A DNA stretch of 64,000 bases from Anolis carolinensis (GCF_035594765.1 NC_085842.1:190663036-190727035); one strand, 5' to 3'. Positions 16,001 to 52,701 are shown, counted from the first letter of the stretch. Notes: a model not told the origin generated them from the sequence alone. Numbers and translations: made by a program.

Positions 16001-19000
16001 TTGCCATTCAACTCAGAGAAGAGGATGGTTCTTTTTTTTTAAAAAAAAAGGGTTAGCTGGCCCTCTGAGGTGGTGCTGAAGGTTTCACCTCTTTGTTAAA
16101 TGACCCTTGACTTAGCCATAAGTTATACAATATTTATTTATTTATTTATTTATTTATTTTATATATCGCTCTTCTCCCCCAGGGGGACTCAGAGCGGTCT
16201 TACATAATGGCAAGATTAATGCCGCATATGATACAAAATATAGTAAAAACCAACAATCGTAAAACACACTTAAAAATCAATATCATACCCAATTAAAACA
16301 GTAAAACACTGTGTGACTGTTATTCCATAATTTTGGCCCCCAAACCCATCCTCAACATATTCATGAGGTCGACCTATGTAGAAATATATACAGTAGGCAT
16401 GTGCAATCCAGGAAAAAAATGGTTCAATACTCGCTTCGAAAGTAGGGAGCGCTAGCGCTTAATTTATAAAGTCATTTCCGAATTTTGAAGCAAAAAATTC
16501 AAAACTTTCCAAAACTTCCTAATCTTCATATGTACCTCATTAATTGCGGATGCGCATACGCATGAATGGAAACATTATTTTCAATGGGAAAACTTTAGGG
16601 GTTTCCCTCTCCCTCATTTTTGAGCTATCCTAATGAAATTTGCTACAGTGGTAGAACACATTTACCACTGTTAACTCACCAAGTCTAAGAATGTTTGACT
16701 TATCCTTAGATTTTTGGCGAATTTTCAAAGTTTTTATTAAAAAACATTTTTTAATGATAACAAAAATCAGTTCGTAGTTTGGAAGTATTATTTCCTGTTT
16801 TATTGGGTTGTCTTTACTTTGAAAGTCATTGTTCTACTTCAAAAACTTTGTTTTTGTGGCTGAAACTTTGTTAAATTGGTGGAGGAAGACTCAACAAACT
16901 ATAATGTGCCATTTTCTATAGGATGATGTCCCTTGCGCGAAGACAAAGTTTTGGCAGTGTAATCAGGTTTCGCCATATTTTTGTGATAGAACCAATTAGA
17001 AAATGACATTTATCAACCAGGAACAGAAATTACAGCACACCATCAAATCACTCCTGACAGATGGCCATCAGCCTCTTAATAAGGAAATCTGTTCCTGGTT
17101 TGAAAATGTTATTTCCTGTTTCATTGGGTTTTCTGGAGCTGAGAGTGTGTGACTTGCCCAAGATCACCCAGTAGGTTTCCATGGCTGAGTGGGGAATCAA
17201 GCCACAATCACAGTCCAACTTTCAAACCAGTACACTATACCATGCTGTCTCAAAACGTTTTGCAAAAGTGTGTCTCCCTGTGCACAAAACTTGGAGCGAG
17301 GAATGGGTGGAAGGAAAAGAGGGAGGAAAGGGTGCCCTGTTTGCTGCTGCTGCTCCAAACAACCTGGGGCTGACTACCTGCTCTCAGAGGGCTCTCTCCT
17401 TGTCCAGCTCCCTCTGCAGCCTCTCCGCCCGGGCTTGCTCCTGAAGGCTCCGGGTCTTGCAGGCAATGCCTCCAAGGATCTCAGCCCCACTGCCATCGAG
17501 GAGGGAAGGAAGGAGAGAAGGAAGAAAGGAAAGAAGGAGGAGAAAAAGGAGAGGAAGGAAGCCACAGAAGCCTCTCTTGGCTTCCCTTCCTCCTTCCCTC
17601 CTTTCTTCCTTCCCTCCTTCCTTCCTTGCCTCCTCGATGGCAGTGGGGCTGAGATCCTTGAAGGCAGTGTCCGCAAGACCTGGAGCCTTCAGGAGCAAGC
17701 CCAGGCATAGAGGCTGCAGAGGGAGCTGGACAAGGAAAGGGGCCTCTGAGAGCAGGTAGTTAGCCCTAGGTTGTTTAGCGCAGCAGCAGTAAACAGGGCA
17801 CCCTTTCCTCCCTCTTTTCCTTCCACCCATTCCTCATTCCAAGTTTTGTGCACAGGGAGGCATACTCTTGCAAAACGCGCCCCTTCTGTTCCTCCTCCTC
17901 TTCAATGTATATTCAGGAGTGAAAATGCTCCAGGCTTGCTTTCTATGGGGCTCTTAAGCCTGATGCAGGAGATTGGTTGAAAACGCTTATATCCGAAGGT
18001 ATGGACTCCAGTGCTTCGAATTGGAAGGTTAATTTAGAAGTGCCAAACCACCTCGGAACTCTGTTCAAATGTATTATGATTAACGAATTTATTACGATTA
18101 ATGAGGATTCTGAATTAATCGCCCATGCCTAATATACAGTAACCAAAGAGAAGACTCACCACTCCTTTGTACTGTTATTTCTAGCTTTCCTACAAGGCAA
18201 CAAGTTTCAGTTTTGTGATTGTGCAAGATCTTTCTGTTTCAAATCTCAAGCCAGCTCCAGTGCGTGTTTACGACTACTATGAAATAGGTAGGTTTTGGAG
18301 GTGTGATATGCAATAGGACTTTGGCAGGTCAGATTAAGACCACATTGGACCCCCCCCCCCCCCAGCCCGGTGCTATTTGGTGGAAAACTTTCTAACTCGC
18401 TTTCATTTGGTTCCTCTTTTCCAGGGAGAGGGAATATTAATTTCATTTCCTTTCATTTCCCGCCTACCTTTGTGACCGTATCTCCTCCTATGAACCTACA
18501 CAATCTCTTCATTCATTGAAGGAGGCCCTCCTCTTGCTTCCATCTCCGTCACAAGTGCAGCTGGTGGGGATGAGGGAGAGGGCCTTCTCCATGGTAGCCC
18601 CTCGGCTCAAACTCGCTCCCCAGGGAGATTAGGCAAGCCCCCACCCTGGTAGCATTTAGGAAGAGTCTAAAAACTTGGTTCTTCCAACAGGCTTTCGGAG
18701 AATGAATCCCCCCCCCCCCCCTTTGATAGTCCTTGTACCATTGGCCATCTCCTCACATATTGCACTTTATTTTGCTTCTTCAGATTGTTTACATTAACAG
18801 GGCCCACCCCTTCCCAAGTTGCGTTCTCATTGTCGTTACCTACAAATTAACTACCTAGTGCTATAATATTCACTCATTTGCACCTTGCCGAGTTCGTTTT
18901 TATCTTCTGTTCCTGGGTGCCAAACCCGTGTTTCAGTATGATTATTTTTATATCTTGGTTATGTTCAGAGTGTTGCATTTCATATGTGTGTTTCTATTCC

Positions 19001-19098
19001 TTGTATGTTTTATTTGGTTTGCTGTTTTTATTCAGGCTTGGCCTCATGTAAGCCTCCCTGAGTCCCTTCAGGGAGATGGTGGCGGGGTATAAAAATAA

Positions 19099-19158
<60 letters not shown>

Positions 19159-19311
19159 TCATTGTTGTTCCCCCATTTTTCAGTGTATGTTTATGATTTG
19201 TTTAAATAGTTTGCCATAACATGTATGAGATGAGTGAATAATATATTATTTTCTCTAGATGAGACTGGTGTTGCTGAATATAAGTTTCCTTGCAATGCAG
19301 AAGATTCTTGA
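953..19311 (+). CDS. Ovostatin-like alpha-2-macroglobulin family gene, 3' portion (about 450 C-terminal aa: thioester domain remainder, CUB, receptor-binding MG8 domain); 11 coding exons, 5' part outside window
   Basis: GT-AG exons with consistent phases: 953-1034, 2247-2403, 4234-4308, 5091-5256, 6852-7072, 9254-9469, 11435-11559, 13497-13587, 15301-15369, 18185-18287, 19259-19311. Motifs [46 protein letters not shown]. Segments such as [29 protein letters not shown] look closer to avian ovostatin than to A2M (from memory). Confidence 0.93.
1480..1635 (+). mobile_element. 5S rRNA-derived SINE (degenerate)
   Basis: TGATCTTAGATGCTAAG...TAGTACTTGGATGGGAGACCACC resembles the 5S internal promoter, followed by a non-5S tail; related pieces ~1125-1215 and ~39310-39385 (-). 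Confidence 0.55.
2247..2403 (+). CDS. ovostatin-like exon (exon 26 equivalent)
   Basis: poly-T tract, ttag|G CTC ACT...AAG|gtac; [13 protein letters not shown]...GKLFNNALK. Confidence 0.95.
3258..3405. mobile_element. PIF/Harbinger-type MITE
   Basis: TIRs GGGCCCCTTCTACACTGCCATATAA / TTATATGGCAGTGTAGAAGGCGC, TTA TSD; relatives ~32750-32890, ~34100-34206, ~43594-43710. Confidence 0.75.
3612..3910 (+). mobile_element. Sauria SINE
   Basis: tRNA-like head GGAGCCCCGGTGGCG...GGTTCAAACCC, (ACCTTT)n tail, TSD ATGTTTGACTCA. Confidence 0.88.
4003..4079. mobile_element. Short hAT MITE
   Basis: TIR CAGGCATGGGCA / TGCCCATGCATG, 8-bp TSD CTCTAAAT; longer relative at 43427-43542. Confidence 0.8.
4234..4308 (+). 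CDS. ovostatin-like exon (exon 27 equivalent)
   Basis: ccag|GGA GGA...TCG|gtattc; [25 protein letters not shown], 75 nt. Confidence 0.93.
5091..5256 (+). CDS. ovostatin-like exon (exon 28 equivalent)
   Basis: tacag|CAC CCA...GTA G|gtgagt; [13 protein letters not shown]...LAYAFGLAG. Confidence 0.94.
5620..5742 (-). mobile_element. Penelope-like element pLTR fragment
   Basis: Reverse complement matches the 49647-49765 unit (CTGAAG.TGCCAGCCACA...GGCCAT.CAGCCCGGAAACCAC). Confidence 0.7.
6852..7072 (+). CDS. ovostatin-like exon (exon 29 equivalent)
   Basis: tcag|GT GGT...CAG|gtaaag; GGSLYWER...[13 protein letters not shown]...[12 protein letters not shown]. Confidence 0.95.
7739..8853 (-). mobile_element. 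5'-truncated LINE-1 (ORF2 C-terminus and 3'UTR)
   Basis: Frameshifted ORFs with L1 C-terminal motif CWK...[10 protein letters not shown]; 15-bp TSD AGTACTCTGAATCTT (7724-7738, 8854-8868); TT/AAGA-type target. Confidence 0.88.
9254..9469 (+). CDS. ovostatin-like exon (exon 30 equivalent)
   Basis: tcag|GAC ACA...CAG|gtaaaa; [13 protein letters not shown]...GNGCVFVQ. Confidence 0.95.
9981..10254. mobile_element. Non-autonomous DNA transposon (CAGGGCCGTAGC TIRs)
   Basis: CAGGGCCGTAGC...GCTACAGGCCTG with internal G-run/C-run repeats; no convincing 8-bp TSD. Confidence 0.55.
11435..11559 (+). CDS. ovostatin-like exon (exon 31 equivalent)
   Basis: ccag|ACA ACT...GCC AG|gtatct; [27 protein letters not shown]. 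Confidence 0.94.
12024..12346. mobile_element. Tc1/mariner (Tigger-like) MITE
   Basis: TIR CAGTAGAGTCTCACTTATCCAAC, TA TSD; other copies 20471-20792 and 34873-35180. Confidence 0.88.
13051..13461. mobile_element. Tc1/mariner (pogo-like) MITE, copy 1
   Basis: TA|CCGTGTTTCCCCGAAAATAAGAC...GGGGAAACAAGG|TA. Confidence 0.85.
13497..13587 (+). CDS. ovostatin-like exon (exon 32 equivalent)
   Basis: tttag|C TAC ACT...AAG|gtaaat; [30 protein letters not shown], 91 nt; absent from ORF track. Confidence 0.94.
13810..14508. mobile_element. Chapaev3-like MITE carrying a nested pogo-like MITE (13981-14379)
   Basis: CACTATATAAC...GTTACGTTGTG ends with TTA TSD; nested copy has TA TSD and matches 13051-13461. 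Confidence 0.7.
14640..15172 (+). mobile_element. CR1 LINE 3' fragment
   Basis: LEYCVQFWA...[21 protein letters not shown]; ends in ATGATTCTATGA. Confidence 0.9.
15301..15369 (+). CDS. ovostatin-like exon (exon 33 equivalent)
   Basis: catag|CTT CGT...GAA|gtaagt; [23 protein letters not shown], 69 nt. Confidence 0.92.
15439..15769 (+). mobile_element. Sauria SINE
   Basis: Same consensus as 3612-3910; TSD TATAAGACTAGA; inserted in an older Tc1-like element (~15410-16393). Confidence 0.87.
16394..18131 (+). mobile_element. Composite non-autonomous hAT element with internal 622-bp palindrome
   Basis: TIR TAGGCATGTGC / GCCCATGCCTA, perfect 8-bp TSD ATATACAG; sister copy at 55686-56562. Confidence 0.88.
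17256..17877. repeat. Long inverted repeat (arms ~300 bp, loop ~15 bp)
   Basis: CGTTTTGCAA...GAAGCCA pairs with TGGCTTC...TTGCAAAACG; mirrored ORFs on both strands in the ORF track. Confidence 0.92.
18185..18287 (+). CDS. ovostatin-like exon (exon 34 equivalent)
   Basis: ctag|CTT TCC...ATA G|gtaggt; [34 protein letters not shown], 103 nt. Confidence 0.93.
19100..19157. repeat. (ATT)n microsatellite at the tail of an L2-type fragment (~18430-19100)
   Basis: Direct reading; preceded by GTAAGCC.CCCTGAGTCCCTT...GGCGGGGTATAAA tail motif. Confidence 0.85.
19259..19311 (+). CDS. ovostatin-like last coding exon (exon 35 equivalent; exon probably extends to a donor at 19334)
   Basis: ctctag|AT GAG ACT...TCT TGA; (D)[16 protein letters not shown]; ATG|gtaagt donor 23 nt after the stop. 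Confidence 0.88.
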
Positions 19312-25344: not shown

Positions 25345-27081
25345 GCATTTGGGTGTGGCTTTCAACTTGCATATGGTAAATGTTTTCTCCTATACTTTGT
25401 TCATTTTTAATTCTAAAATGTAATCTACTTTCTAGATAGCCCTTGTATTAAGATATGTGATGTATTTTTTTACATTTATGTGAAGCATTGAATTTTGCCA
25501 TCTACTACGTTGTAAACCACTTTGAGTCCCCCCAGGGGTGAGAAAAGAGGTATAGAAATGTAAAAAACAAATAAACATAGAGAAAGGTATGTGATGGATG
25601 GGGTTACACTTCCTCTGAAAGCTGGGGGTGATCCTGGATTCATTGCTGACCCTGAAGCCCCAAGTATCATAGGTGACCAGGAGTACCTTTGCACAATTAA
25701 AGCTTGTAAGCTTGGAACACCAAATCAGGTCATGGTAGTACATGTCTTAACTACATCTCAAATGGATCATTGCAATACACTCTATGTGGGGCTGCCTTTA
25801 AAGAGAGCTCAGAAGCTTCAACAGGTTCAGAGATCAGCAGCCAGGTTAACTTCTTTGACTTCAAGGAGCTATTGCCTTTGACTATGAAAACATGTGTTGT
25901 TTTCAGGTTAGTTCTCATCAGAACTTTTTTTGCCAAAGTTCATCAAATTCTTCGCCTCTTCTGTCCTCCATTATGCAGTTTTTAGGTTTCATTTTTAGGA
26001 TGGTGTCTTCAGCCTTACCAGACTCCATACATTCAGTTTCTTCAATCTACTCATCACAATGGTCATGGGAATTTGCAAGCATTTTGGATCAATTGATTCA
26101 TGTAAATACGGTCCAATTCAGGATCTAGATTCTAAGTGGCATAGTTCTAATGTATTTATCTCTATATAACCCTGTCCTTGGTCTTTAGAAAGGATCTCTT
26201 CCCATCTCCATTTAGATGGCAGTCATTTAATGAGCCATCACACATGGGAGTCAAAGCTCCTACCCATCTGTGCTGCCACATCTATGAGTGTTGCTGGATT
26301 GTTTTCTCCCTGTCCAGTCTCTCTACAAGGGGAGAGCAGTCAGAAAGCAACCTATGCCATTCCTACCATGCTCTCATATTACCTCAGTATGGAACAGTTC
26401 AAGATGGAGGTCTACCTGCATCCCTTAGCCGTTACTTTAGCATTTTAAAGACTTGGTAGCAGGGCTAGTTCATGATCCCTCAGACTGCAGGAGGGGCAGA
26501 CTATCATTTGAAAAAAACGTGAATTTCTATGCATGCAGCCCATTCTTTATTTGAAGTGCAAAAAATGAAAGAACAATACAAGATTTAATATGAACAGTTT
26601 TAACTAACACAAACTTACCAGTATTTCAGTGGGAAGTATGTGCCTGCTTTCAGCTGATAAGATAGTCAAATTAATTAGGACTGTTGTTGTTATGTGCCTT
26701 CAAGTTGTTTCAGACTGAGGGTGACTCTAGGGATAGGTAAAGGACTACTCTACTTCTTGCTATCAAAAATGTTTTATTATATCTTTGAGAATATTAAAGA
26801 AAGGCAAGTGGCATTAGACTCTTCACCTCTGTCTAATCCAGGCCAAAGACGATGACCTCCAGGAATGTCAAGCTGTGCCCCTGAGCAATGGGCACAGCCC
26901 ATGCAGACCATTCAGCCATTGTGGACAAACACCTCCAGCTGGTAAGCCTCCTGTTTGCCATCTGGGACTGCCCCAGGTACGAGCCGACTATCAGTGGCCA
27001 AAGCTTAGAACAAAGAGACATTGATCACTCCACCACACCTATGGACATTCCCAAGACCTTTACTTTATTTGCCCAGCCTGA

Positions 27082-27532
27082 GACCAGACACAGAAATCAT
27101 GTTGTGTACCTTGTTCACATACGCTGGATTCACACTGGCTTGGTGCAGAGCTTTCAGAATAGCACTGAATATCCGTCGTGATGCTTTTGATTCATTGTCT
27201 CTGGCATTCTAGACTGTATCTGCATAATGCTGTCATCTACATACGCAGACATCCATTGTCTTCAAATTCCAACTTAAGACCTCCAAATATGGACTGTGTT
27301 TCCTGGGACCAGACACAGAAATCATGTTGTGTACTGGTTCACATACACTGGATTCACACTGGCTTGGTGCAGAGCTTTCAGAATAGCACTGAATATCCGT
27401 CGTGATGCTTTTGATTCATTGTCTCTGGCATTCTAGACTCTGTATCTGCATAATGCTGTCATCTACATACGCAGACATCCATTGTCTTCAAATTCCAACT
27501 TAAGACCTCCAAATATGGACTGTGTTTCCTGG
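27082..27532. repeat. ~225-bp tandem duplication
   Basis: GACCAGACACAGAAATCATG...GTGTTTCCTGG starts at 27082 and 27307 with few differences. Confidence 0.92.
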
Positions 27533-28498
27533 GGATTCCCTCCATCCAGGGACACACCCCCAACCAACTGATTGGCTGCCCCAGGGCTTCCCCATCTAGT
27601 AGGGAGGGGATCCCCACCTGCATCATCAAAGCCTGCACCAAACAGAAGGTGAGCTGGCTTAGTCCCACCTCCTGACCAATCAGCCAACCAGCCCCGCACT
27701 CAGCCAATCTCAGACAGGGGAGGGAAAATTAAATTGAGGCAATGTTAGTACATGGGTTTTTACTGTATAAAAATGGTTACATGTTCCAATATGGTTATGC
27801 TTGTACATTTTGGCATTTTTCGGTACATTGCATTCCTTCTGCAGATTAAAATTAAAGCCTCTGTCCTTGTCTTCAACCCTGGTGAGTTTTACTTCCTCTG
27901 CAAACATTGTCAGTTAGCTGGGGTCACCAGGCACGGACACTCGGTATCCGTGGTCCTTAGATTTTTGCATTTTTCAAATGCCAGACTAGATTCAGGCATA
28001 AACCAGAATAAACTTTTTTTTCTTCCTTACTTGGAACCCTCTCACACTCAGTTATAGTGCTATGATTCTACTTTAACTGCCATGAGTCTATCTGATTGAA
28101 TCCTGGAATTTACAGTATACGGAGAGTGATCTAGAATTCAGAGCCAGACAGTTCCTCTATGCTTCTGATTAAACTACAACTTCCACAAGTCTACAGGAAG
28201 GAGCTATGGCAGTTAAAGTGGAATCATAGGACAATAATGGTGAAGAATGACAGGGTCTCAGTTTGCTAGGAGGTCATCTGTGTGGCTTACAGTAGCTTCT
28301 GCTTCTTTCCATTATTATGGCACATTGTGTCCCCTCACTGCCTCCTGTGCCTTTTATCTCATTCTGCATGTTGTTTGCAGATGACCCATATTCAGACAGT
28401 CAGACAGGCTGGTGAGTGATGCCAAGGTAGTACAAGGTGAAAAAAGCCACAACAGTTCCATTCTGCCTCATTCACTTGTTATCAGTCCTCTGACAACC

Positions 28499-30189
28499 AT
28501 GGAGAAAAGCAGAAGCCTACTTTTTCTATTCTTCTTTTTCATCATCCTTGGTGTTTCCTCACAACCTACCACTGAACCGTAAACAGCTTGATTGTGTGAA
28601 TGGGTGAGGGTGTGTGTCTTTCCTTGCCATGTTTCCCACGCAAGTGATTTTTGTCAATTTCCCCCTAGAATGCAATTCTATGCCTTTCCTTGCTGCTACA
28701 CAAAGCAGACAGATATTTAACTTATGGAATTCACTGCCATAGGTTATGTTGGTGACAGCTGCTTCCTTAGATACTTTTGAAAGAGGGTAGACAAACCTAG
28801 GAAGGATTTGGTGATGTGAAGCTTTCATTTTTAGGAATGCTCGGTGTTGGGAGCAGATGGCAGGGGAGGGTAACTCTACTTGTACAGAGTAGTAGCTTAA
28901 TGTCAGTCCTTGGAAGCTATAGGACACAAAGCAGGCTCACACAGGCAATTCCGTGGAAACACTTTATTGATATCCTTCTTGCCAAGATGAAAACAAAGCT
29001 ACTACTAACTGAGACCCGCCCAAACCCCAACATGTCAAACAACTACTTCTCCCCGCCCCCCTTCCATGTTCACACCTATCTGTCGACATTCCTTTCCCAG
29101 GCTCGAAGGCCAGAGCATGTCACAAATCAATCCTCCCAGCCAGATGGCTCTTATCAGTTAGGCCATTCCCATCCCAATTAACTCTGGTAGGATGGGAACA
29201 GATCGGCTTGGTGTGAATGCTGGGCTGATCACATCCTGACATGTCCATGAAATTGGAATTCTTGGGCATTTTTCCAAGTTCTGGCAATGTTAGTTCTTGC
29301 TACTCATACAAGGATTGCTGAAATTACTTTATTATATAATTGCTAATTTCCCCAATAATGTACTTGTGTCTTCCTTCTCCGTTTCTCACCCACAAAAGGC
29401 ATATCAAATAACACATTATTTTAGATGGCCAAATGAAATCTAAAGAATGCCCTATTAAAAAGAAGGCAAATTCATGTTCACATCCTCCATCACTCTTAAA
29501 CCAACCTGCAAACATCAGAAAAAGATTTACCTTCTGACTCTCACTTTGAGCCTACTTCCCTCAAGAGGTTGTACATACTTTGCAGTATTCTTATGAGGAA
29601 TAGCTTTCCTGGAGAGGGAGGGAAGGAGGGATTGTAAGAAAACATCTCCAATGATTCCAGCTGTTTCCACAGATGAACAGTGTAACTCAGAGTTACTCCT
29701 TCCAAGTGAAGCAGGACGTGTCAGTTCAGGGCCTCAAGCCAGCCGTGGTGAAAGTTTATGACTTCTACGAAACAGGTAGAAATGGGGGCCCAGTAGTAAA
29801 ACACAGGTCGATATATTTACTTTCATTTGTAACTTTTATGTAAAATTTCAAGGGCCTGACATAGGGTAGCAGCAACTATAACATTATTCTTTACAAATAT
29901 TCCAAAACCAGTCCTTAACAAAATGGGAAGCAGAAAGCAGTAGAGGGGCTATTAACAGTTGCTATCCATGCAGAAAGTTGGAGCACTGGTGTCACCGAGT
30001 TTGGGACTGATGCAATCCTATCCTGATGGCTTTCCTCCTTCTCACTCTGTTTCTAGATGAATTTGCTGAATATGTTGCCCCCTGCAGTGTAGGTAAAGTA
30101 TAGATTGTGTCTTCAACCCATTTATCACCCTTCAGGCAATTAATTCCAGCTTCTTTTCTCCAGAAGAGTCCTGGAATAACCCAGTTTAG
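28499..30189 (+). pseudogene. Internally deleted A2M-type gene remnant: exon 1 plus exons 34, 35 and possibly 36 only
   Basis: 28499-28578 MEKSRSLLFLFFFFIILGVSSQPTTEP ending CC|gtaaac (phase 2, like A2M exon 1); 29673-29775 [34 protein letters not shown] (103 nt, ag/gt); 30057-30092 (D)[11 protein letters not shown] (ag/gt, 6 nt shorter than canonical); possible terminal exon 30164-30189 (E)ESWNNPV*. No intervening exons recognisable. Confidence 0.8.
28901..29241 (-). mobile_element. Solo LTR-like element (Gypsy-type ends) without matching TSD
   Basis: TGTCAG...CTGACA termini, TTTATT (AATAAA on -) ~60 bp from the left end; flanks CTTAA vs TGTCC. Confidence 0.6.
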
Positions 30190-31000
30190 GTATTGTTTAA
30201 AAAATGGTCTTTTCACTTTTCACCACAAAGGACAGGGATGCAAGACAGCCTATAAAAAAGTTAAACATAAAGCATTTGCGTGGATAAAGAAGTTGTTTCT
30301 TAAGATTATGGCTCACTTACACTCAACAAAGGGAATGCTTTTGTTGTGATGTGCTGTTAGCATTTGTGTTGTCAAATGTGTTGAGAATTATAACAGTATA
30401 ATTCTCTGGTGGGTTGGAACACCAAATTTCTCAACCGGGAGATGTTCTGAGGGTGTGTGTCTGGAAATTAACTCGATTTGAGTGTTGGAATTGTGGCAAT
30501 AATAGCATTTGTGGATTTCTAAATGTGTTTGTTGCCACCTGTTCCTGAATATGGATAATGTGGGTCTTCCCTAATTCCCTTTATCAGCAGTAGACCTTCT
30601 CACACCAACCAAACCTGAGCATCTCTTTACAACTCCCAATTGCTTACCACATGAGCCCCTTCCAAAATCTTCATGAAGACTACACCTGTATCTGATATGT
30701 ATGTCTGCAGTTCCAGTCCCTATTACCAAACCTTCCTTGGGTTGCAAATGTGGGGGGAATATAGGGTGAATTGACACATTTCCATGTCCAAAATACTCTC
30801 TTCCTCTGCTCTCAAATTTCCCTTTATTCTAATGTTTGAAAGGAGAATCGTGTTGTTAATTCAGTTGTTAACTGGTTCGTCCTAGCTTTTGAAGCAGCAG
30901 AGAACCTAGCAAAGTCTGTGACAAGTCAGTTTGGTCCCTGCTGTCATATTGGCTCTAACATTTAAATCTCTAAATGGCTTGGGATGAAGTTACCCTAAAG

Positions 31001-31522
31001 CAGTGATGGCTAACCTATGACACGTGTGTTAGCACTGACACGCCTAGCCATTTTTGGTGACACGCTGCCGCATGCAGATTGATTGGATGACTATGTCTTT
31101 TGTGGCCAAATTTGGTGTGATTTGGTCCTGTGGTTTTGTTGTTTACTCCATGGAAATTATGCACATTACATTTATATAATCATTATATCATTCTATTATT
31201 ATTGTAGTATATTATCATATGATTACTATTATATTATTATTATATTATTCATTATTCATGACTACATTGAAACTAGAATAGAGAGAAATCAGTGTGGAAA
31301 CTGCAAGAGGTACCATTGATTGTTGTACATGGAAATAATGGTAGTAAATAGTTTTTGATTTATTAAATACAGTTATATATTACAATTATACATTTTTGAT
31401 ATTTAAACTATACATATTGCTAAATTATGGTTTTTTTCTTGAAGTGACACACCACCCAAGTCATGCTAGGGTTTTTTTTGGTGAATTTTGACACACCAAG
31501 TGCAAAAAATTGCCCATCATTG
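31001..31522. mobile_element. hAT1-type non-autonomous element
   Basis: CAGTGATGGCTAACCTATGACACGTGTG...TGCCCATCATTG, 8-bp TSD CCCTAAAG. Confidence 0.85.
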
Positions 31523-33423
31523 CCCTAAAGCCTCTTTTTTCCCATATGCAGCTAACCAAATTTGATTGTTTTCTTATAGGTCTAATTCTAAGTATCTTAC
31601 TAGTAAACTGAAATTAATATTAGAGTCCATTTCAATAGTGGCACCATTGGAATTCACCAAAGGCCCACCCAAAATACACAATGATAAACCATATAATTCA
31701 ACTTTAACTGCAGAGTCTGCAACTCATGGTATCCTGAGATTTGTAGTCTGTTTGGTAGCAACAGTGGAACTCTGAAATGTGCTCTGTAAATTGCAAACCC
31801 CAGAATTCCTCAGGATAGGACCACAATATTTTTAAGGATAGTGTGAACGGGTCCCTCTTGCTATCTCTATTGTCCTTGTTGTGACTGATAAAAACCTCTC
31901 CTTTTCACCCTTTTAACTTATTCAAAATTGCTTGCTTTTATTTTTCTGCTGGGAAAGTAAAAGATCAAGGACAGGTCAGGACTCTAACGCCCATCCTCCC
32001 CAGGAAACCAATGAGGGCCATGCGGGCGCTCTGCACATGATCTGGGGCGCCCTCTACAGAGCGGCTTTTTTTTGGCCTTTCCCTTCCTGATCCTCTTTCT
32101 GTGTCTCTCCCTCCAAAGCGGAGGCTCCCAGGCCAGGCAGACATATCAGCAACAGTTCCTCTTTGGCCCTGCCCCGCCAAGATTCAAATACCCCAATCAG
32201 ACACTAGGGGCGTGGCCATAGAGGGTGAAGGGAACGCCCATCAGGGGCCGGAGCCTCAGGGAAAGGGGCGGAGTTACTTAAGTGAGAGGTTTCCTCTCCT
32301 TTTAGGTGTCACATCAAAACACACATGCTTAATGGAACATTTACTAAACATAGAAAACACTTTTTTTTCGGGTGAAGGAGTACATTGTCACCAGGACAAA
32401 CCTGGGGGGGAAAGAATTATTAAATTAATAATAAATACTTCCATTAAATAATAATATTAACAGCAACAACAGCCTGTTATCTGGAAAGGCATGGCACAAC
32501 CGTACAGGTGTTTCCCTCCCAGGTTCCACAATGGCAAGATTTAGGCGGAATCGACGCTGCCCAGGATCCCTTGAACTGGATTATATCAGTCTACACTGCC
32601 AGCTAACCTGGGATAAACAGACAGGATGTCCCTTCCACAGAAACAAATAGTTTGCAGTTTAATAACCATTTCACATGTTTTTATGATAGACTCAGTTAGG
32701 AAATGACATTTGTAACCCAGGATAAAATCTTGATTTTATGTGGCAATGTTAGGCCCTCTATCCCAGGTTCGAATCCCAGATTTTCTACTTTAAACTGCAT
32801 TATATAAGTCCGCACTGCCAGATAACCTGGGATAAACAGGAAACCTGGGATCAGATCCTGGAATAGAGGGCCTGTCTGGAAGGCCCACAGAAGGGGAGGG
32901 GGGTCTTTTTTGTCCCCATATACACTGCGCACTGAAGTCAGTTTCAAACCGCTATTGGGGGGTAAACGTGGCTTTGTGCAGATAGCTCCTTAGTAGGCAT
33001 GGGCGGGGCTTTAGCAGAGGGAGTGGGCTTCACTAATAAATCTTGCCAAGTGTAACGTTGATAGTTCGAAGCCCAGGTCAGGATGAGCTCCTGACCTTTA
33101 GCCCAACTTTTACCTACCTAGCAGTTCGAAAACAAAAGTGAGTAGATAAATAGGAACCGCATTAAACCGGGGAGATATTTACACTCACAAAAAGGAAAAA
33201 GTTTACAAAGAAAGCTCTTTGGCAGGGAGATGGAGTGACAGCACCCCCCAGTGGCCGGAACCGAGCACAGCCTCCAAAGATGCCGAAAGATGGGAAAGTC
33301 TATATATACCTCTCTCCATTGTCTATCTTATTGTTATAATCAGCACTGAAAGTTTGATGTGTGTTTTGTGATCCGCCTTGAGTCTCCTTTGGGATGAGAA
33401 AGGTAGAATATAAATACTGCAAA

Positions 33424-37920: not shown

Positions 37921-40292
37921 GACTTTGTATTACAGGAGGTATTTTGGGGGTTTTTTTTGTGTGTGTGTCAGGAGCAACTTGAGTCACTTCTGGAGTGAGA
38001 GAATTGGCCATCTGCAAGGACTTTGCCCAGGGGACGCCCGGATGTTTTGATGTTTTTACCATCCTTGTGGGAGGCGAAAGTAGCTGAGCATGAGAAACAG
38101 AAGGTGATTGTCCTTCTGAACTGCTTATTATATTTTCTCCAAATTTGGGTGAATATGCTGGGCAAGAACAGAGGCGAGGCTTTGAATCTTGTTGGGCAGA
38201 TCTCGTTCTTTTAGCTCAAGAAAAAGGAAGTGACAAATCTCTGAATAAAATCTTGCCCAAAAAGCTTTTTGTTTGCAGTGCACTAACTCGAAGGCACATA
38301 AAACAACTAATGCTAAATTTCATAGTGCACAGAAGCCTTGGTTAACTTACTCACATATGAATGTTGCGAAATGTAAGCAGGGATCATTTATAACCATGTT
38401 CAAAGGGAATCTCCAATTCTGAGGTGATACTTTGTTTGATGCTGTTTAAAAATGTAGAAACAGCTTCAGGATATACAAAATGTTAATGTCATGATCCAAC
38501 GGGACCATACCTGAACAAACATGGGTGTAATTATTTATTATTTATTTATTTCCAATATTTCTACCCCGCCCTTCTCCCCGAGGGGACTCAGGGCGGCTTA
38601 CACAACTGGTAGGATCACTATTAGTATTTCAAGAGAGAGTAGGTAGGATCATAATTAGGATCATAATTAGTATTTCAAGAGAGAGTAGGTGTCTTCAAAA
38701 TGGGATCGCCGGTGCTCAACTTGCACTGGATGCACTGATAAAATGAGAACTACTTATTTATTTCAAGAGGTCACAAAAAGAGGATCTGAATCACATCTGT
38801 TGGTTAAACGGAGACATGATTCATAGTTCTTTGTGTGTCACTGGAAAGTCTGTTGCTTGTGCTAATTTTGCAGTTTTGGCATTCCAGAGGTAGAGGTACA
38901 TCTTTTTGTCTTTTAGGGACTTTAGAGTCCAGGTTGTATCTCACCAGATTCCTGCATCAATCTTGTGCTTCAGTCTTCCTAGCCATTCCAGCCAGTCTCC
39001 TCATTTGAACAGGACACTGCTGCTGGAATTCAGACCAATGAAAAGGTTACAATTCATCTTTAAAAATGACTATAATAAATATGTACATAATCAGGCTTCT
39101 GTGAAATGGCACTATCATGTTCTCTGAACATCAGTCATAAGAACTGCCAAAGATCAGACCAGTCTACCTTCCATACATTTATTTATCCCATGGTCAAAAG
39201 CTACATAAATATAGTGAATACCACCACACTCTGATGTTCAAATGTAATAGATATTTAAATTACAGTAGTCCCTGCTTCACCAAACATATTTCCTGAATGT
39301 TTGTATTAACCCATCCAATTGCTAACCAGAGCTGACCTGTTTTGCTTCTAAGATCAGACTAGATCTAGTACCTTAGGGTATTTAGGCCTATCCCAAAAGC
39401 ACTTACATAGGCATAATTACCAGTTGTGCCATTACCAGGTAAGTTTCACCATTTCCCCTGCAATGTACCTGAAAGAAAAATGCCTTAAATTACAGTGCAG
39501 TTGTTTGTTGGAAAACTATCTGAGCCCTTGGGGAGACAGGTGTGGGATATGAATAAAGTTTTTTATTATTATTATGTGTACATTGAGGCTTCTCCTGATT
39601 CTTCCTGTTTTACAGTCTTGTCTATTCTATAGAACAGGTTCTTCTTTCTGATTTCAACCTTAAATCTATCTAGTACAAACCTCGTGGTCAGTTCAGGGCC
39701 TGCATAGGAAAGAGCTTCAGGTAAAACGTGATCCTTTCGTCGTGTTTAAAGCAAGCGTGCCATGCTGTGCTGTGCTGCTACCATTTTTCTATTTTTTTTG
39801 CCTGAGAACATTCCACTTAAACCTTTTGCATTTTCACTTCCCTATGTATAAAATGACTCATAACATAGTGCCACTTAAAAGTCTTTAAATTGCAAATTTT
39901 ACAGTGCAAAGAATTGCAAGTTCAAAGGAGTTACTGGTTCTGGACATTTGAAGTCAACCTAGCCTGAGTAATCCCAGTTACCTAAGGGCTGAAAAAAAGT
40001 GGAAGAGAATACTAACTAGTGAATGTGCTGACTGTCTCCTCCTGTCAGGTGGACTTTAGTTTTGTGACTGTCTTGGAGAATGGTCCTGGTGTACTTGGTA
40101 CAAATCCCTCCCTTAAGTGGCAAATTTCTCCCAGCACCCTATAATTCTGTCTTGTCATTCCTATGAGAGTAGTCATGTTCCAGATTCCTTCAAGGTCCTT
40201 TTGATTTCTGGAACTCAAATGTCACTGCCAGGCAGAAATATTAACAATGTGTCTTCACTTGTTGTCTCTACTTTATTTCAAGTTCTTATAGA

Positions 40293-40450
40293 ATGTTCCT
40301 GGCCCGTGCCTGCCTCCATGCTGTGGTGCTTGCCATCATAACTGCCTCAACAACTGATGAGAATAAATGTGATCTAGTTGGGGAGGAAGATCATGAATCC
40401 ACCAAGGAAAAAGCACTGCTGAAGAGATTGGAGCCACTTGCCAACATGAG
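40293..40450 (+). CDS. M6PR: M6PR coding exon 1 (signal peptide)
   Basis: atag|A ATG TTC...ATG AG|gtacag; [16 protein letters not shown]...KCDLVGEE...LLKRLEPL. Confidence 0.93.
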
Positions 40451-43400
40451 GTACAGAGCTTGCAGCGAAAGTGGCTTACTCAGAAAAGGGACGATTGTGA
40501 TGCGGTCAGTGAAACAGATGCCAGTGACTTAAAGAATGTTGAACTTTTGATGTTAGGAAACAGAAAGTGATCCAGAAGTCACTTGCTCATGCTGGCTGGG
40601 AGATTTTAGGAGTCCCTGACTTGACTTGAGTGAGGTGCTAGTGTCACTGGCCATGCTGGTTATGGAACTGTAGGAGCAGTAGTCCAAATAAGAGGGAACG
40701 TTTCCAATCCTTCATTCCGATGACACTTGAAATGAACAGCCGTGCCTTCATTTGAGAAACAAACACTTTTTCAGAAAAGCCGGGGAGGGGGGGGGGGGGA
40801 ATCTTTCCAGTTCTTTCAGATTTTCCATCATGCAACATGTTGTAATTTTTCCTGAGGATGGAATCTCTACAGTTCTAAAAATTATACCTCTTTGGTGTTT
40901 CCTCCCGCAGTTTTCAAACACAGGGCAAAAGTGAAAGTGATACGTACACCTACACGCTCCGGGTGTGTCGAGAAGTTCCTGGTAGTGCTCCTTATGCTGG
41001 CCTGGTGCAGGAGGACACTGCAAACAACAAAAAAGTAGTGGTGGGGCGAATCAATGAGGCCCACCTTGCAAGTGGAAGTAAGATGTCCCAATTCTTCAAC
41101 AGATCTTCTCTGTTGCATTACCTGTAGAATATGTGCTTCATTAGGTGTCCTTTGTATTTGTGTCTTGGCAGGTAAGTGGATTATGCTGATCTATAAAGGG
41201 GGAGATCCCTATAATAATCGTTGTGACAAAGAGAAGAGAAAAGCCATAATAATGATCAACTGTAACCGGAAAACACTAGCAGTGAGTAGTTACTAAAGAT
41301 GGGGAAGTTAAAAAAAGAGTGCAGGATTTATTTTTGAACAAATTAATAATGTGGCTAGAAGTAAATGCTCATTATAGTATCTCCAGTTTTGAGTGCACTG
41401 AATATAATTTGAGCTGAGTTACATGCTCAAAAGAATGAGGTTATACATTCCCGCAGGGATAGTAACAGATCAGAATAGCAATGACGTTCTTCTTTGCTTT
41501 AGCATTCCATTGGTTGGGCAAGTTTTCACCAGCAGTTAGTTCTTTAAGTAGAAATAGGTTAAAACATGCAGTTTGCATTGTAAGGTAAGATCACCTCTCT
41601 TGCTGGCTAGCAGAGTAAATACTGCTCTATTGAAATGGACTGACCTGTGGGGGAAGAGTAAAACAAATGTGAAGGATAGTCTAGGTGTTTCAGAAGGCTA
41701 AAGGGAAGGAAGGATTCTGTCTTGTATTTATTCTGGAGATAATGCATATATAGATTACTTTCATGAATGTTTTATCTTGCCCAAACAGACTGGTTTCACT
41801 ATGGTCACAGAAGAGCGGGAGAAGATCAATGAGTGTTTCTATATCTTTGAATTAGAGAGCAGTTTGGCCTGTCCTCCAGAAGACTCACATCTAAGTGTTG
41901 GCTCCATATTGCTCATCATGTAGGTTTATTTAAAATATTCAGCACTGCACTGCACTCATTGTCTGAAGTCATTATATATCAAGGGGATTTAAAGGTATTA
42001 AACAATTAAGCTTTAATTTTGGGACAGGACTACCTTTAGAAAATTGAATTCACCTACGATTGCTTAATTCACGGGTCCTGTCTCAAAATCAGATCGCATA
42101 GTGGAAGACAGTGTGGATTTGACTTACCTTCCCAGGAATAATGAATCTGTATAATGAAGGGTGTGAATTTGAAACTCTGCAAGGCAAGTGTTTGCATCTT
42201 CCCAGCTTATTTCAGAATAAAGAACACCTGTGTAGCAAGGTTTCTCTATAGCCATGGTTTTTTCCGCTGAAATTTACAGTGAAAATGTAAATGTTTTATG
42301 TAATAATACAGACCATCAACCATTTTCCTGTATGTCATATTTTTTCAATAGATTAGCAGTTTTCTTCCTAATATATTTGTATTTTGAATTTGTATTCCAG
42401 ATTTGTATCACTGGTTGCAGTGTATATCACTGGAGGATTTCTTTACCAGCGTCTGATAGTGGGAGCAAAAGGCATGGAGCAGTTTCCCCATTTTGCTTTC
42501 TGGCAAGATCTGGGCAACCTAGTGGCAGTAAGTAGTAAAGAACTTGTCCATATTTTGCAGTATGGAAGTTGCAGCCTGTGGTGATTTCAGAGTTTTTATA
42601 AAATTTCATATTCCAGTGCCTTACAACACTGGGAAAAAGCTTCCTTCGGTACTTGGCTGATCTGCTAATATGTCATGAGACCATGAGTTAGCATGATGGA
42701 AATGAGCTGCAGCGTGCTTTGAGTTTATCCAGGTTCCTGCTTCTAATGAAATATTGTTGAAAGCGTGCAGAAAGGAGTTGCAGCAAACCTCAGGCCTGTT
42801 TCTTTCTTCAAGCCCCGGAAGAGTTCTGGACTTTTCTTGTTAAGCAAAGAACCACACGTAAAGAGTTGTCTCCAACACAATACGCCATAGTTTAGCTTAA
42901 CCTCAATGGCAGCTTTTGAATCTACTTGAATATAAATCGACCTAATGTAAAGGTTGGGGACAGATTTGTGAGCCAAAATTACAGATTTTGATATGAAGCA
43001 TTCCACGGAGTGGAGAACCAACCAGTGTTGTCCCGGGGGATCAGGTACCCCTGGCCACCACCATTACCATCTTCTCACCCTGGCATTAAAAAAGGGGTGG
43101 AAAGCAGCACAGTGATAGGTAAAGGCAAGGCAGTTGGTGATTCTTTTAGCCTCTCTTGGGACATACTATGCAAGCATAGTACTCAAAACTTTTTAAGCAG
43201 AGGGCTGGTTCTAAAGTTTAGGGTGGGGGCTGATAATTGACCTTGGAGGGCCACATCTGGCCCACAGGCCTTAGTTTAAGAACCCCTGTACTATGCTTTT
43301 GTTACTGTACTCAGAGAAGGGGGGTCCTGTTTTAAGATACAGTATTTAAGTTGACCTGTGAATAAATACAGATTTTTGAGTTTGTTTTTTTGGCTAACAT

Positions 43401-44414
43401 TTTTAGAGTTCTACGTGGATATATACCAGGCATGGGCAAAATTTGGGCTTCCAGGTATTTTCAACTTCCAACTCCCAGAAATTAGGAATTGTGGGTGTTG
43501 GAAGTCCAAAACACCCAGAGGGCTGAAGTTTGCCCATGCCTGATGTATACAGTAACAAATCAGCAGTATATTCATAAGCACTGATTGTTCCCAGGTCCCT
43601 TCTACATTCCCCTATATCCCATAATCTGATCTGGCAGTGTACACTCATAATCCAGTTCAAACAAATAATTGGGATCAGATCCTGGGATATAGGGCAGTGT
43701 AGAAGGGGCCCCAGTTGCAGGGGGAATGCCTGCAATTCTTGTCAGCTGAACCTGGCAGAAACCCATGTTACTGCTTGTTGCAGGAGAAACGAGCAGACTT
43801 AACACCTGCTGAGTTGGAACACACCAATTAAAAAAAAAAATTAATATTGTTTACTCTGCTCTTTTCACTATTGCATGCAAAAGCCCTGATTTTTATTATC
43901 CAAATGCAGCCAAGGGGTGTGTGGGTTTTGGGTTTTTTTTGGCTTACTGGTTTCCATGCTGGATTGCTGAACTAGAGCATTGGGCTTTTAAAGATAACAG
44001 ATGAATTCTTGAGTAACACATAGACATGTGACAGAAGCGGATTTTAGCACTAGCATACTATGGATTTTCTTTTAACCTTGGTTGCTTGCACCAAGAGCAC
44101 TGCTCTTTGGCACATTTTGTCTAGAATCATTTGTGTTTAATTTGAATTTATTTTGTGTATCTTCAAGATTAAGGAGGCCAGAATAAATCATTCTAAGAAG
44201 TGAAACATCCCAATATGGATTGTAAGAGAGTAGGATGACATTCCAACAATTTCTTGTGGTCTCATGTTAGGGCATTGATCTGTGTTTACAGGATGGCTGT
44301 GATTTTGTGTGCCGGACAAAACCACGAAATGAACCAGCTGCATATCGTGGTGTTGGTGATGATCAGCTTGGAGATGAGTCGGAAGAGCGAGATGACCATT
44401 TACTACCCATGTGA
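40293..44414 (+). CDS. M6PR: Cation-dependent mannose-6-phosphate receptor (MPR46), complete, 271 aa, 6 coding exons
   Basis: Exons 40293-40450, 40911-41077, 41172-41281, 41789-41919, 42401-42527, 44292-44414 sum to 816 nt in frame; [10 protein letters not shown], EERxKxxxCFYxFE, TM segment, [41 protein letters not shown]. Confidence 0.97.
40911..41077 (+). CDS. M6PR: M6PR coding exon 2
   Basis: cgcag|T TTT CAA...GGA A|gtaaga; [10 protein letters not shown]...AGLVQ...VVGRINE. Confidence 0.94.
41172..41281 (+). CDS. M6PR: M6PR coding exon 3
   Basis: ggcag|GT AAG TGG...GCA|gtgagt; [36 protein letters not shown]. Confidence 0.95.
41789..41919 (+). CDS. M6PR: M6PR coding exon 4
   Basis: aacag|ACT GGT...ATC AT|gtaggt; [28 protein letters not shown]...[10 protein letters not shown]. 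Confidence 0.95.
42401..42527 (+). CDS. M6PR: M6PR coding exon 5 (TM and start of cytosolic tail)
   Basis: tccag|A TTT GTA...GCA|gtaagt; [42 protein letters not shown]. Confidence 0.96.
44292..44414 (+). CDS. M6PR: M6PR last coding exon
   Basis: tacag|GAT GGC...ATG TGA; [40 protein letters not shown]. Confidence 0.97.
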
Positions 44415-49006: not shown

Positions 49007-49161
49007 TTAGGTCTCTTTGAGAATGTTAATCTTAGCGCAGATCTTGAGAGCAGGACCCAGCTTGATATTCATGGCACTCATGAGGTGCTCTTCCTTCAGA
49101 AGGAGGAGAGCCTGACCATCAATCTCTTGAGAGCGAAACTCCTCTGCAATCTCCTGGCAAC
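49007..49161 (-). CDS. PHC1: PHC1 last coding exon (SAM C-terminal part)
   Basis: tttag|GT TGC CAG...ACC TAA. Confidence 0.96.
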
Positions 49162-50117
49162 CTAAAGGATTCAAACAGGAAAGAAATCCTATGAGGGGTA
49201 ATAGCAAGAAGACTAGACACTGTTCTACTCATCTATACTTTAAATTTAAGAATGAGAAAGACTTCGAATCTATACAGAAGAAGAGTGCCATTTTTGTGCA
49301 GTTTGCTCTAGAACAGTGCTTCTCAAATTCCAATCCTCCAGGTGTTTTGGACTTCAACTCCCAGAAGCCTCAGCTGCCTTAGCCAATGACCAGGGATTCT
49401 GCGTAAATGAAGTCTAAAACTCCTGGGAGAGCACAGTTTGGGAAACACTGCTCTAGAATACTCTTAAATACATCCCAGCAAGTATGATGAAGGGGTGCAT
49501 TTTCACTTTTGGAGACTGACTTGGCCTGCAGGGACAAAAACAAATTTTGCTCCAGGATTGTGTGGTTTCCAGGCTATATGGCCATGTTCTAGCAGCATTT
49601 TCTCCTGACAATTTGTCTGCATCTGTGGCTGGCATACTTAAAGGATCTGAAGATGCCAGCCACAGATGCAGGCGAAATGTCAAGAGAAAATGCTAGAACA
49701 CGGCCATACAGCCCGGAAACCATACAACACCCCAGTGATTCCAGCCGTGAAAGCCTTTGACAATACAAATTTTGCTCTGTTGTGATCCAAACCATCCACT
49801 AGAGGGCCCAGAGAGCTTTTAACAATTTAAGTCAAGAAGCAGCTTTTTAAAAAACCTAAAAACATGGTGCAACTACTCCTGTATGCCCCCTATACATTTT
49901 GAAGCATTTTTATTTTATTTTATTGTTTGGCAAGTGCAGCCCACTAACCCTCCACAGCTGCCCATCTGTAATACCTTGTAAGGTGCTTTCAAGTTCAAAA
50001 TACTTCATAATGACCTTTAAATCATATTGGGATGAAGGGATCCAAGACAAAAGATACCAGAAACACGCCACATTAGTCATCATTATAGTATACTAACATA
50101 GACAAGCAGTCACATGC

Positions 50118-50150
<33 letters not shown>

Positions 50151-52660: not shown

Positions 52661-52701
<41 letters not shown>

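What the first reader, a model, noticed from the sequence alone, without database searches (positions are those of the whole stretch)
28499..30189. An alpha-2-macroglobulin gene collapsed to 1.7 kb: exon 1 sits next to exon 34
Seen: an intact signal-peptide exon (Kozak ACCATGG, phase-2 donor) lies 1.1 kb from exons encoding [25 protein letters not shown], which resemble human A2M ([27 protein letters not shown]) more than the upstream ovostatin-like gene does. Established: A2M genes have ~36 exons and human A2M lies upstream of M6PR on the same strand. Inference: about 32 exons, including bait region and thioester, of what may be the positional A2M ortholog have been deleted. Splicing exon 1 to exon 34 gives CC|A TGA, an immediate stop (27-aa product). 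The surviving exons still have open frames and canonical splice sites, so the loss is recent, the remnant is used, or the assembly is collapsed.
Basis: partly seen in the sequence, partly recalled or inferred. Interest (0 to 1): 0.8.

Follow-up and report, generated by a model that had tools for sequence, protein, structure and literature searches.

The report
Gutted alpha-2-macroglobulin gene remnant beside M6PR
In this lizard genome, the alpha-2-macroglobulin-type gene next to M6PR has lost everything between its first and its third-last exon, leaving a dead 1.7-kb stub; this is ordinary decay in a gene family known for it, and the assembly join still needs long-read proof.

Summary
An A2M-type exon 1 lies at 28499-28578. 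It has a Kozak ATG, a signal peptide and a phase-2 donor after ..TTEP. It lies 1.1 kb upstream of the third-last (29673-29775) and second-last (30057-30092) exons of an A2M-clade gene.

- Exon 1 is homologous in peptide and DNA to exon 1 of intact A2M genes from anole, spiny lizard, gecko and turtle.
- Exon 34 hits Pfam A2M_recep and human A2M residues 1425-1455.
- About 270 A2M-family proteins find no other A2M exon between 19.4 and 35 kb.
- In a gecko, an intact 1488-aa A2M-like gene sits in the same place, directly upstream of M6PR, with the same exon-34-to-M6PR spacing. The positional-ortholog reading therefore holds.
- The surviving exons show early decay: three changes at near-invariant residues, a 2-residue deletion, a weakened exon-1 donor, and no detectable last exon.
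- The join lies in a high-copy LTR-like repeat without target-site duplication. That fits LTR-mediated deletion, but no short-read contig bridges it, so assembly collapse is unlikely but not excluded.
- Expression is untested.

This is a truncated pseudogene in a birth-and-death gene family, of modest interest.

The parts
28499..28578 (+). Exon 1 of the A2M-clade remnant. It holds a Kozak ATG, a signal peptide, and ends ..TTE + CC in phase 2. The donor is GTAAAC at 28577.
   Evidence: Sequence read. Peptide homology to bird and turtle A2M N-termini (..SPTTEP). DNA alignment with exon 1 of intact A2M genes, and an identical exon end GAACC|GTAAG. The remnant's donor has A instead of the family's G at position +5.
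28901..29241 (.). LTR-like high-copy repeat (TGTCAG...CTGACA termini) lying between exon 1 and exon 34. It is the probable deletion scar.
   Evidence: Word depth is 100-1100x against about 10x in the flanks, and contigs break at 28919 and 29212. The flanking pentamers are CTTAA and TGTCC, so there is no target-site duplication. No copy was found in the fetched loci or elsewhere in the window.
29673..29775 (+). Third-last coding exon ('exon 34') of an A2M-clade gene. It encodes part of the receptor-binding domain.
   Evidence: Pfam PF07677 at 33.2 bits. PDB matches to human A2M residues 1425-1455. DNA identity of 74-81% to the same exon of seven intact reptile genes.
30057..30092 (+). Second-last coding exon ('exon 35'), [12 protein letters not shown], carrying a 2-residue deletion. 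Read-through gives VGKV and a stop at 30101-30103.
   Evidence: The acceptor ..CAG|ATGAATTT and the donor G|GTAAAGTAT are conserved with intact genes. The D-to-C distance is 12 residues in 107 of 114 intact proteins and 10 here.
30164..30189 (+). It is not supported.
   Evidence: In intact genes the last exon lies 0.8-2 kb after exon 35 and encodes about 8 residues ending ..G(K/N)A. Nothing similar was found in 30.1-35.2 kb.
18185..19311 (+). Context: the last two coding exons of the upstream ovostatin-like gene (..[14 protein letters not shown] / [17 protein letters not shown], then stop).
   Evidence: The gene is closest to bird OVOS (58% identity over 421 aligned residues).
40245..44411 (+). 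Context: M6PR coding exons. The promoter CpG island is near 35.2-35.9 kb.
   Evidence: Pfam Man-6-P_recep at E 3e-17 and 6e-17. ORF pieces. Colinear with gecko M6PR.

Best explanation
This is an unprocessed, internally deleted pseudogene. It is the remnant of the A2M-clade gene that ancestrally sat directly upstream of M6PR on the same strand.

Shown:
- Only exon 1 and the third-last and second-last exons survive, in the original order and orientation.
- The bait region, the thioester domain and all MG domains are absent from the assembly.
- Splicing the survivors together gives a stop after 27 codons, so no A2M-like protein can be made.

Inferred:
- The piece removed was of the order of 75 kb, judging from intact orthologs of 40-94 kb.
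- It was probably removed by unequal recombination between two copies of a young LTR family, one in intron 1 and one in intron 33. That would leave the single LTR-like element at 28901-29241, whose flanks do not form a target-site duplication.
- The gene was under purifying selection for most of its history (dN/dS 0.13-0.24 against intact genes). It then began to decay, with three hits at near-invariant residues, a weakened donor and a lost last exon.
- The loss of function is therefore evolutionarily late, not ancient.
For: Exon 1 homology:
- The peptide score beats all 500 shuffles.
- The Kozak context and the GAACC|GTAAG exon end are conserved in Anolis sagrei, Sceloporus, Mauremys and Eublepharis genes.

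3' exon homology:
- Pfam A2M_recep and PDB A2M receptor-binding domains.
- 77-83% identity to squamate and turtle A2M-like proteins.
- Conserved splice junctions.

Absence of exons 2-33:
- tblastn with all the fetched A2M-family proteins of at least 300 aa found only exon 34 between 19.4 and 35 kb.

Position:
- In Eublepharis, an intact 1488-aa A2M-like gene ends 9.2 kb upstream of M6PR on the same strand.
- Exon 34 to the matched M6PR coding exon is 10.2 kb there and 10.45 kb here.
- The initial Met of exon 34 is seen in only 1 of 114 intact proteins; that protein is the gecko gene.

Decay:
- Three deviations at the 15 columns that are at least 95% conserved, while 112 of 114 intact proteins have one or none.
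- A 2-residue deletion in exon 35.
- Donor position +5 changed from G to A.
- No homolog of the last exon.

Repeat at the join:
- High copy number, TG..CA ends and no target-site duplication.

Flanks:
- Single-copy depth in DNA runs of two independent studies.
- The stretch is held by runs of 8 studies.
Against: - No contig bridges 28920-29212, so the physical adjacency of exon 1 and exon 34 rests on the assembly alone.
- The surviving exons are still open and keep canonical splice sites, and both indels are in frame. With only 46 codons this is weak evidence for constraint, but it is not nothing.
- The LTR identity of the repeat was not tested against a full element. LTR-LTR recombination is inferred only from the missing target-site duplication.
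- The exon-34 data (34 codons) cannot tell an old paralog from an ortholog that has drifted neutrally for a long time.
- No RNA data could be evaluated. The two 'RNA?' runs look like genomic DNA and show no spliced joints.
Confidence: 0.78

Rival explanations
1. Assembly collapse. The real genome has an intact gene with two copies of the LTR-like repeat, one in intron 1 and one in intron 33. The assembler joined across them and dropped the interval.
For: The join lies exactly in a 341-bp repeat with 100-1100x depth, and no Logan contig bridges it. The repeat lacks a target-site duplication, which a chimeric join would also produce.
Against: - The surviving exons carry marks of relaxed constraint that an intact functional gene should not show. 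These are three changes at residues conserved in at least 97% of 114 proteins, a unique 2-residue deletion, a +5 donor change, and no last exon.
- 64 kb without N suggests a long-read assembly, in which a 341-bp repeat is easily spanned.
- The flanks are at single-copy depth.
Confidence: 0.1
2. The 3' exons are still used, for example as alternative terminal exons of the upstream ovostatin-like gene. Exon 33 of that gene ends in phase 0 at 15369 and could splice in frame to 29673. That would give the protein an A2M-type receptor-binding tail.
For: The frames are open, exons 34 and 35 have canonical AG/GT sites, and the phases are compatible. dN/dS is well below 1.
Against: - Changes at invariant positions (E to K, P to S, Y to F) and a deletion in the tail.
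- The upstream gene has its own complete last exons and stop codon 10 kb earlier.
- No spliced joint was seen in any run laid, although none of those runs is proven RNA.
- 46 open codons are expected by chance fairly often.
Confidence: 0.05
3. There was never a whole gene at this place. The exon-1 piece and the exon-34/35 piece arrived as partial duplications of an A2M gene located elsewhere. The skink Tiliqua has a comparable partial copy that is 91% identical to its parent.
For: Partial A2M-clade copies exist in other lizards: the Tiliqua 723-aa model and the Podarcis 435-aa model.
Against: - The gecko has a full gene at exactly this position, with matching spacing to M6PR.
- The pieces are in the gene's order and orientation.
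- dS of about 0.7-1.4 to every intact gene, including the anole's, shows that this is no recent copy.
- The exon-1 peptide keeps the ancestral ..PTTEP of birds and turtles, which the anole and Sceloporus genes have changed.
Confidence: 0.05

Closest known systems
Pseudogenes and partial copies in the vertebrate A2M family cluster (mouse and rat A2ml1-ps remnants, dog PZPP, the rabbit partial MUGL model of 158 aa, human PZP2P and OVOS1P), as catalogued in PMC12874980
   Same: It is a non-functional remnant of an A2M-family gene left inside the conserved cluster, next to the M6PR > < PHC1 marker block. It is unprocessed, with its introns kept.
   Different: Here the loss is one clean internal deletion that keeps the first exon and the third-last and second-last exons, not scattered disabling mutations or a one-sided truncation. 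That paper does not describe a lizard case in its main text.
Intact squamate A2M-like genes, especially Eublepharis macularius A2M-like (P0214) directly upstream of M6PR
   Same: Same chromosomal position and strand relative to M6PR. Same exon-1 end and phase, same exon 34 and 35 junctions, a short intron 34 (248 against 281 bp), and the rare Met at the start of exon 34.
   Different: The gecko gene has all its domains (MG2-4, bait region, A2M, TED, receptor-binding) over 77.6 kb. The window keeps 219 coding bases in 1.6 kb.
Tiliqua scincoides partial A2M-like model XP_066469321.1 (P0062) and Podarcis muralis A0A670HR82 (P0067)
   Same: Both are lizard A2M-clade copies that keep only the 3' part, including the receptor-binding exons.
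   Different: Both keep about 10 exons of the 3' half and lack an A2M exon 1. The Tiliqua copy is a young duplicate (91% identical to its parent) fused in the gene model to MHC-I exons at a chromosome end. They are not at the M6PR position as far as could be seen.
Deletions by recombination between dispersed LTRs or proviruses (for example the human AZFa deletion between HERV15 copies; recalled from memory, not checked here)
   Same: A single LTR-like element without target-site duplication sits at the junction of a large deletion.
   Different: The two-LTR ancestral state has not been observed here, and the repeat has not been shown to belong to a retroelement.

Membership tests
A2M/PZP clade of the alpha-2-macroglobulin family (as a gene lineage) | Receptor-binding domain sequence (Pfam PF07677) with the ..LKPA.[9 protein letters not shown] / DEFA..EY.APC tail | tested here: met
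   33.2 bits against a cut-off of 21.7. 77-83% identity to A2M-clade proteins, against a 63% match (27 residues) to the upstream ovostatin-like gene's own exon.
A2M/PZP clade of the alpha-2-macroglobulin family (as a gene lineage) | Exon 1 encoding the signal peptide and ending ..EP in phase 2 just before QY | tested here: met
A2M/PZP clade of the alpha-2-macroglobulin family (as a gene lineage) | Position upstream of M6PR on the same strand | tested here: met
   Shown by the window layout and by the gecko locus L006. Human A2M-M6PR synteny is recalled from memory.
Functional alpha-2-macroglobulin (protease trap) | Thioester (TED) domain, bait region and MG domains encoded at the locus | tested here: not met
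   No tblastn hit to residues 1 to about 1415 of any family member between 19.4 and 35 kb.
Functional alpha-2-macroglobulin (protease trap) | An open reading frame across the spliced exons | tested here: not met
   Joining exon 1 to exon 34 gives CCA TGA.
Unprocessed (non-retroposed) pseudogene | Homologous exons with introns and splice sites in place, but essential parts lost | tested here: met
Unprocessed (non-retroposed) pseudogene | Relaxed selective constraint | tested here: inconclusive
   Three hits at 15 near-invariant columns and a unique deletion point to relaxation. However, dN/dS is 0.13-0.24 over only 34 codons.
Unprocessed (non-retroposed) pseudogene | No productive transcript | not testable with these tools
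   No confirmed RNA run holds the stretch. The single read-laying run showed no spliced joints, but only in doubtful 'RNA?' runs.
Solo LTR left by LTR-LTR recombination | TG..CA termini with short inverted ends, and a multi-copy family | tested here: met
   The ends are TGTCAG...CTGACA and the depth is 100-1100x.
Solo LTR left by LTR-LTR recombination | Flanks that do not form a target-site duplication (inter-element recombination) | tested here: met
   The flanks are CTTAA and TGTCC. The element's boundaries were set from depth and termini only.
Solo LTR left by LTR-LTR recombination | Full-length elements of the same family with internal gag-pol | not tested
   No repeat library or whole genome was available, and no copy was found in the fetched loci.

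The most novel reading that the evidence does not exclude
The deletion is young and perhaps still polymorphic, made by recombination between two LTRs 75 kb apart. In that case some individuals or sister species would still carry the full M6PR-adjacent A2M paralog. Alternatively, the surviving receptor-binding exons are spliced onto the neighbouring ovostatin-like transcript as an alternative tail.
Probability: 0.08. Interest if true: 0.5.

Novelty: new member of a known kind. Interest (0 to 1): 0.3.

Why it matters
This is a clean, datable example of how one member of the A2M protease-inhibitor cluster dies. A single internal deletion removed every functional domain but left the promoter-proximal exon and the 3' exons as signposts.

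- For genome annotation, these exons should be labelled as a pseudogene and not merged into neighbouring gene models. Such merges were seen in the skink model that fuses MHC-I and A2M exons.
- For comparative immunology, the A2M-clade copy at the ancestral M6PR-adjacent position is dispensable in this lizard lineage, presumably because another A2M-clade gene remains.

It does not change what is known about how A2M proteins work.

Tried and rejected
1. I looked for A2M exons 2-33 anywhere between the upstream gene and M6PR with about 270 family proteins, on both strands. None was found.
2. I looked for a homolog of the true last exon in 30.1-35.2 kb by peptide scoring and by sensitive blastn against four intact loci. 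None was found. The only extra hits (31.66-31.83 kb) belong to a dispersed repeat that also occurs at 28.05-28.24 kb.
3. I tried to settle the join with public reads. Contigs stop at both edges of the repeat, so the result says nothing either way.
4. I looked for RNA evidence. No listed holder is on record as RNA, and the two 'RNA?' runs that I laid cover introns and intergenic DNA evenly and show no splice joints.
5. I tested whether the remnant is a recent copy of the upstream gene. There is no DNA similarity.
6. I tested whether it is a recent copy of the anole-type intact A2M. dS is about 1, so I rejected this.
7. I sought M6PR next to intact A2M genes of Anolis sagrei, Sceloporus, Pogona, Tiliqua, Lacerta and Mauremys. 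There is none within 10 kb. That limit is about the distance seen in the gecko, so these blanks are uninformative.
8. I counted exons of intact genes by tblastn chaining. Coverage was incomplete, so the numbering '34, 35, 36' rests on the human 36-exon structure, recalled from memory, and on these being the last three coding exons.
9. I did not search with a joined (spliced) model.
10. I did not try to identify the species beyond 'anole-like', which rests on repeats shared with the A. sagrei locus at 84-86% identity.

Full report
**What is in the sequence**

The window has no N. On the + strand it holds, in order:
- the 3' part of an A2M-family gene that runs off the window start;
- the finding;
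- M6PR.

PHC1 follows on the - strand. The upstream gene ends with its own receptor-binding exons at 18185-18290 (..[14 protein letters not shown]) and 19260-19311 ([17 protein letters not shown], then stop). Summed over its exons, it is closest to a bird OVOS protein (58% identity over 421 residues). M6PR exons (40.2-44.4 kb) and the PHC1 SAM and FCS-finger exons (49.0-52.2 kb, - strand) are confirmed by Pfam. Together they form the M6PR > < PHC1 block that PMC12874980 describes as a conserved marker beside the A2M cluster in birds, reptiles and mammals.

**The observation**

The coordinates are exact.
- Exon 1: ATG at 28499 in ACCATGG, 26 codons of signal-peptide-like sequence ending ..QPTTE, two further bases CC, and the donor GTAAAC.
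- Exon 34: 29673-29775, behind a CAG acceptor.
- Exon 35: 30057-30092, behind a TAG acceptor.
- Joining exon 1 to exon 34 reads CCA TGA, an immediate stop.

Exon 34 alone reaches the Pfam A2M_recep threshold (33.2 bits) and aligns to human A2M residues 1425-1455. At DNA level the remnant has no similarity to the upstream gene. It is therefore neither a recent local duplicate nor that gene's own terminal exons.

**Is the 28499 exon really an A2M exon 1?**

Yes.
- Against the A2M-family proteins fetched, the peptide aligns at the very N-terminus of bird and turtle A2M (M-G-K-x-R ... LLLLFFLPG-TSPTTEP). Its global score is 50, against 12.8 +/- 7.0 for 500 shuffles, and no shuffle reached it.
- In the genomic loci of intact A2M-like genes from Anolis sagrei, Sceloporus undulatus, Mauremys mutica and Eublepharis macularius, exon 1 ends GAACC|GTAAG, in phase 2 after ..EP, exactly as here. 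The ACCATGG start context is shared by three of the four; the gecko reads GCAGCATGG.
- The remnant differs by an in-frame gap in the signal peptide and by A for G at donor position +5.

**Which gene do the 3' exons come from?**

- Exon 34 is 77-83% identical to squamate and turtle 'alpha-2-macroglobulin-like' proteins of the A2M clade. At DNA level it is 74-81% identical to the same exon in seven loci.
- The exon 35 acceptor (..AG|ATGAATTT) and donor (G|GTAAAGTAT) are conserved.
- In intact genes these are the third-last and second-last coding exons. The last exon, about 8 codons, lies 0.8-2 kb further on.
I found no homolog of the true last exon in 30.1-35.2 kb.

**Is everything between really missing?**

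A tblastn search with every fetched family protein of at least 300 residues, on both strands, found only exon 34 between 19.4 and 35 kb. No MG, bait, thioester or CUB exon is present, not even as a damaged trace.

**Position**

- In the leopard gecko locus L006, an intact A2M-like gene (1488 aa, all Pfam domains, 77.6 kb) is followed 9.2 kb downstream, on the same strand, by M6PR.
- Window and gecko are colinear. Exon 34 matches at 79.5% identity, followed by the M6PR coding exons, spaced 10.2 kb apart in the gecko and 10.45 kb here.
- The remnant's exon 34 begins with Met. Among 114 intact proteins this occurs in only one, and that one is this gecko gene.
- Intron 34 is short in both (248 and 281 bp) but 800-1450 bp in the iguanian and turtle genes.

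Intact A2M genes of A. sagrei, Sceloporus, Pogona, Tiliqua, Lacerta and Mauremys show no M6PR within 10 kb. That limit is about the gecko distance, so these blanks decide nothing.

**Paralog or sole A2M?**

- The window's repeats match the A. sagrei locus many times at 84-86% identity, far better than they match the other loci. The animal is therefore probably an anole or a close relative.
- Anoles have an annotated intact A2M.
- The remnant's exon 34 differs from the A. sagrei A2M exon at dS of about 1.0, whereas A. sagrei and Sceloporus differ at 0.32. Its exon 1 also keeps ..PTTEP, where those genes have ..PAEP and ..TAEP.
- The simplest reading is that the remnant is a second, old A2M-clade lineage at the ancestral position, with another A2M-clade gene still intact elsewhere.
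- With 34 codons I cannot exclude an ortholog that has drifted neutrally for a long time.

**State of decay**

- Against 114 intact sauropsid A2M-clade proteins, exon 34 has three changes at the 15 columns that are at least 95% conserved: E13K, P17S and Y31F, each seen in 0 of 114. By comparison, 112 of the 114 proteins have at most one such change.
- Exon 35 lacks two residues that 107 of 114 proteins have.
- dN/dS against intact genes is still only 0.13-0.24, compared with 0.08-0.20 among intact genes. The frames are open and both indels are in frame.
- Together this suggests a gene that was constrained for most of its history and lost function late.
- The openness of 46 codons is weak evidence on its own.

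**The join**

- Between the exons lies a 341-bp element (28901-29241) with TGTCAG...CTGACA ends. Its word depth is 100-1100x, against about 10x in the flanks, and the flanking bases do not form a target-site duplication.
- This is what unequal recombination between two LTRs of one family, in intron 1 and intron 33, would leave. It is also where an assembler could in principle collapse.
- The one read-laying run could not decide. In DNA runs of two studies, single-copy contigs cover 28055-28919 and 29175/29212-31029, and none crosses the repeat.
- I rate collapse as unlikely (about 0.1). An intact hidden gene should not show the decay marks listed above, and the window is gap-free. Only long reads or PCR can close the point.

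**Expression**

No holder of the stretch is on record as RNA. The two doubtful 'RNA?' runs cover exons and introns alike and show none of the expected splice joints. Whether the remnant is transcribed, or whether the upstream gene's exon 33 ever splices to 29673, remains untested. That exon ends in phase 0 at 15369, so the phase would fit.

**Comparison with what is known, and verdict**

- The A2M cluster is a birth-and-death family with many named pseudogenes and partial models (PMC12874980).
- I also met partial A2M-clade copies in a skink and a wall lizard.
- This remnant is a new, tidy member of that known kind. It is notable only for the clean internal deletion, the probable LTR scar, and its place at the ancestral M6PR-adjacent position.
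- It is not a functional A2M, because the defining domains were tested for and are absent.

Noticed in passing
window 40245-44411 (+) and 49010-59070 (-): M6PR on the + strand and PHC1 on the - strand (SAM domain exon at 49010-49228, FCS zinc-finger exon at 52001-52198, Q-rich exon at 57094-57981) lie tail to tail. This is the conserved M6PR > < PHC1 block described in PMC12874980.
   Followed up: partly
window 27077-27533: A tandem duplication of about 225 bp, two copies 97-100% identical. One DNA run (X9) has a contig that skips 224 bp (27123 to 27348), so the copy number varies between individuals.
   Followed up: no
window 31008-31508: An AT-rich repeat with enormous word depth in every run, over 100,000 in the two DNA runs against about 10 for single-copy DNA. 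It is one of the most abundant repeats of this genome.
   Followed up: no
window 28052-28237 and 31660-31830: An inverted-repeat, MITE-like element just upstream of exon 1, with a related copy 3.5 kb downstream. Many contigs of other copies join across it. Similar sequences occur repeatedly in the Sceloporus and A. sagrei A2M loci.
   Followed up: partly
L001 (Tiliqua scincoides CM068525.1, last 66 kb of the record): The annotated 723-aa 'alpha-2-macroglobulin-like' protein is a chimeric model. MHC class I exons (10-16 kb) are fused to A2M exons of the 3' half only (53.4-61.9 kb). That part is 91% identical to the skink's full-length A2M-like gene 2 Mb away.
   Followed up: partly
window 30426 and 30853-30859: Relative to the assembly, individual X9 lacks 16 bp at 30426 and has 39 other bases in place of 5 at 30853-30859. 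In exon 1 it has a synonymous A>G at 28528, and a 4-bp deletion at 28588 in intron 1. No variant falls in exons 34 or 35.
   Followed up: no
L002-L008, intron between the third-last and second-last A2M exons: This intron is 168-281 bp in gecko, skink, lacertid and the remnant, but 800-1450 bp in the three iguanian genes and the turtle. It is a possible lineage marker for sorting A2M-clade paralogs.
   Followed up: partly
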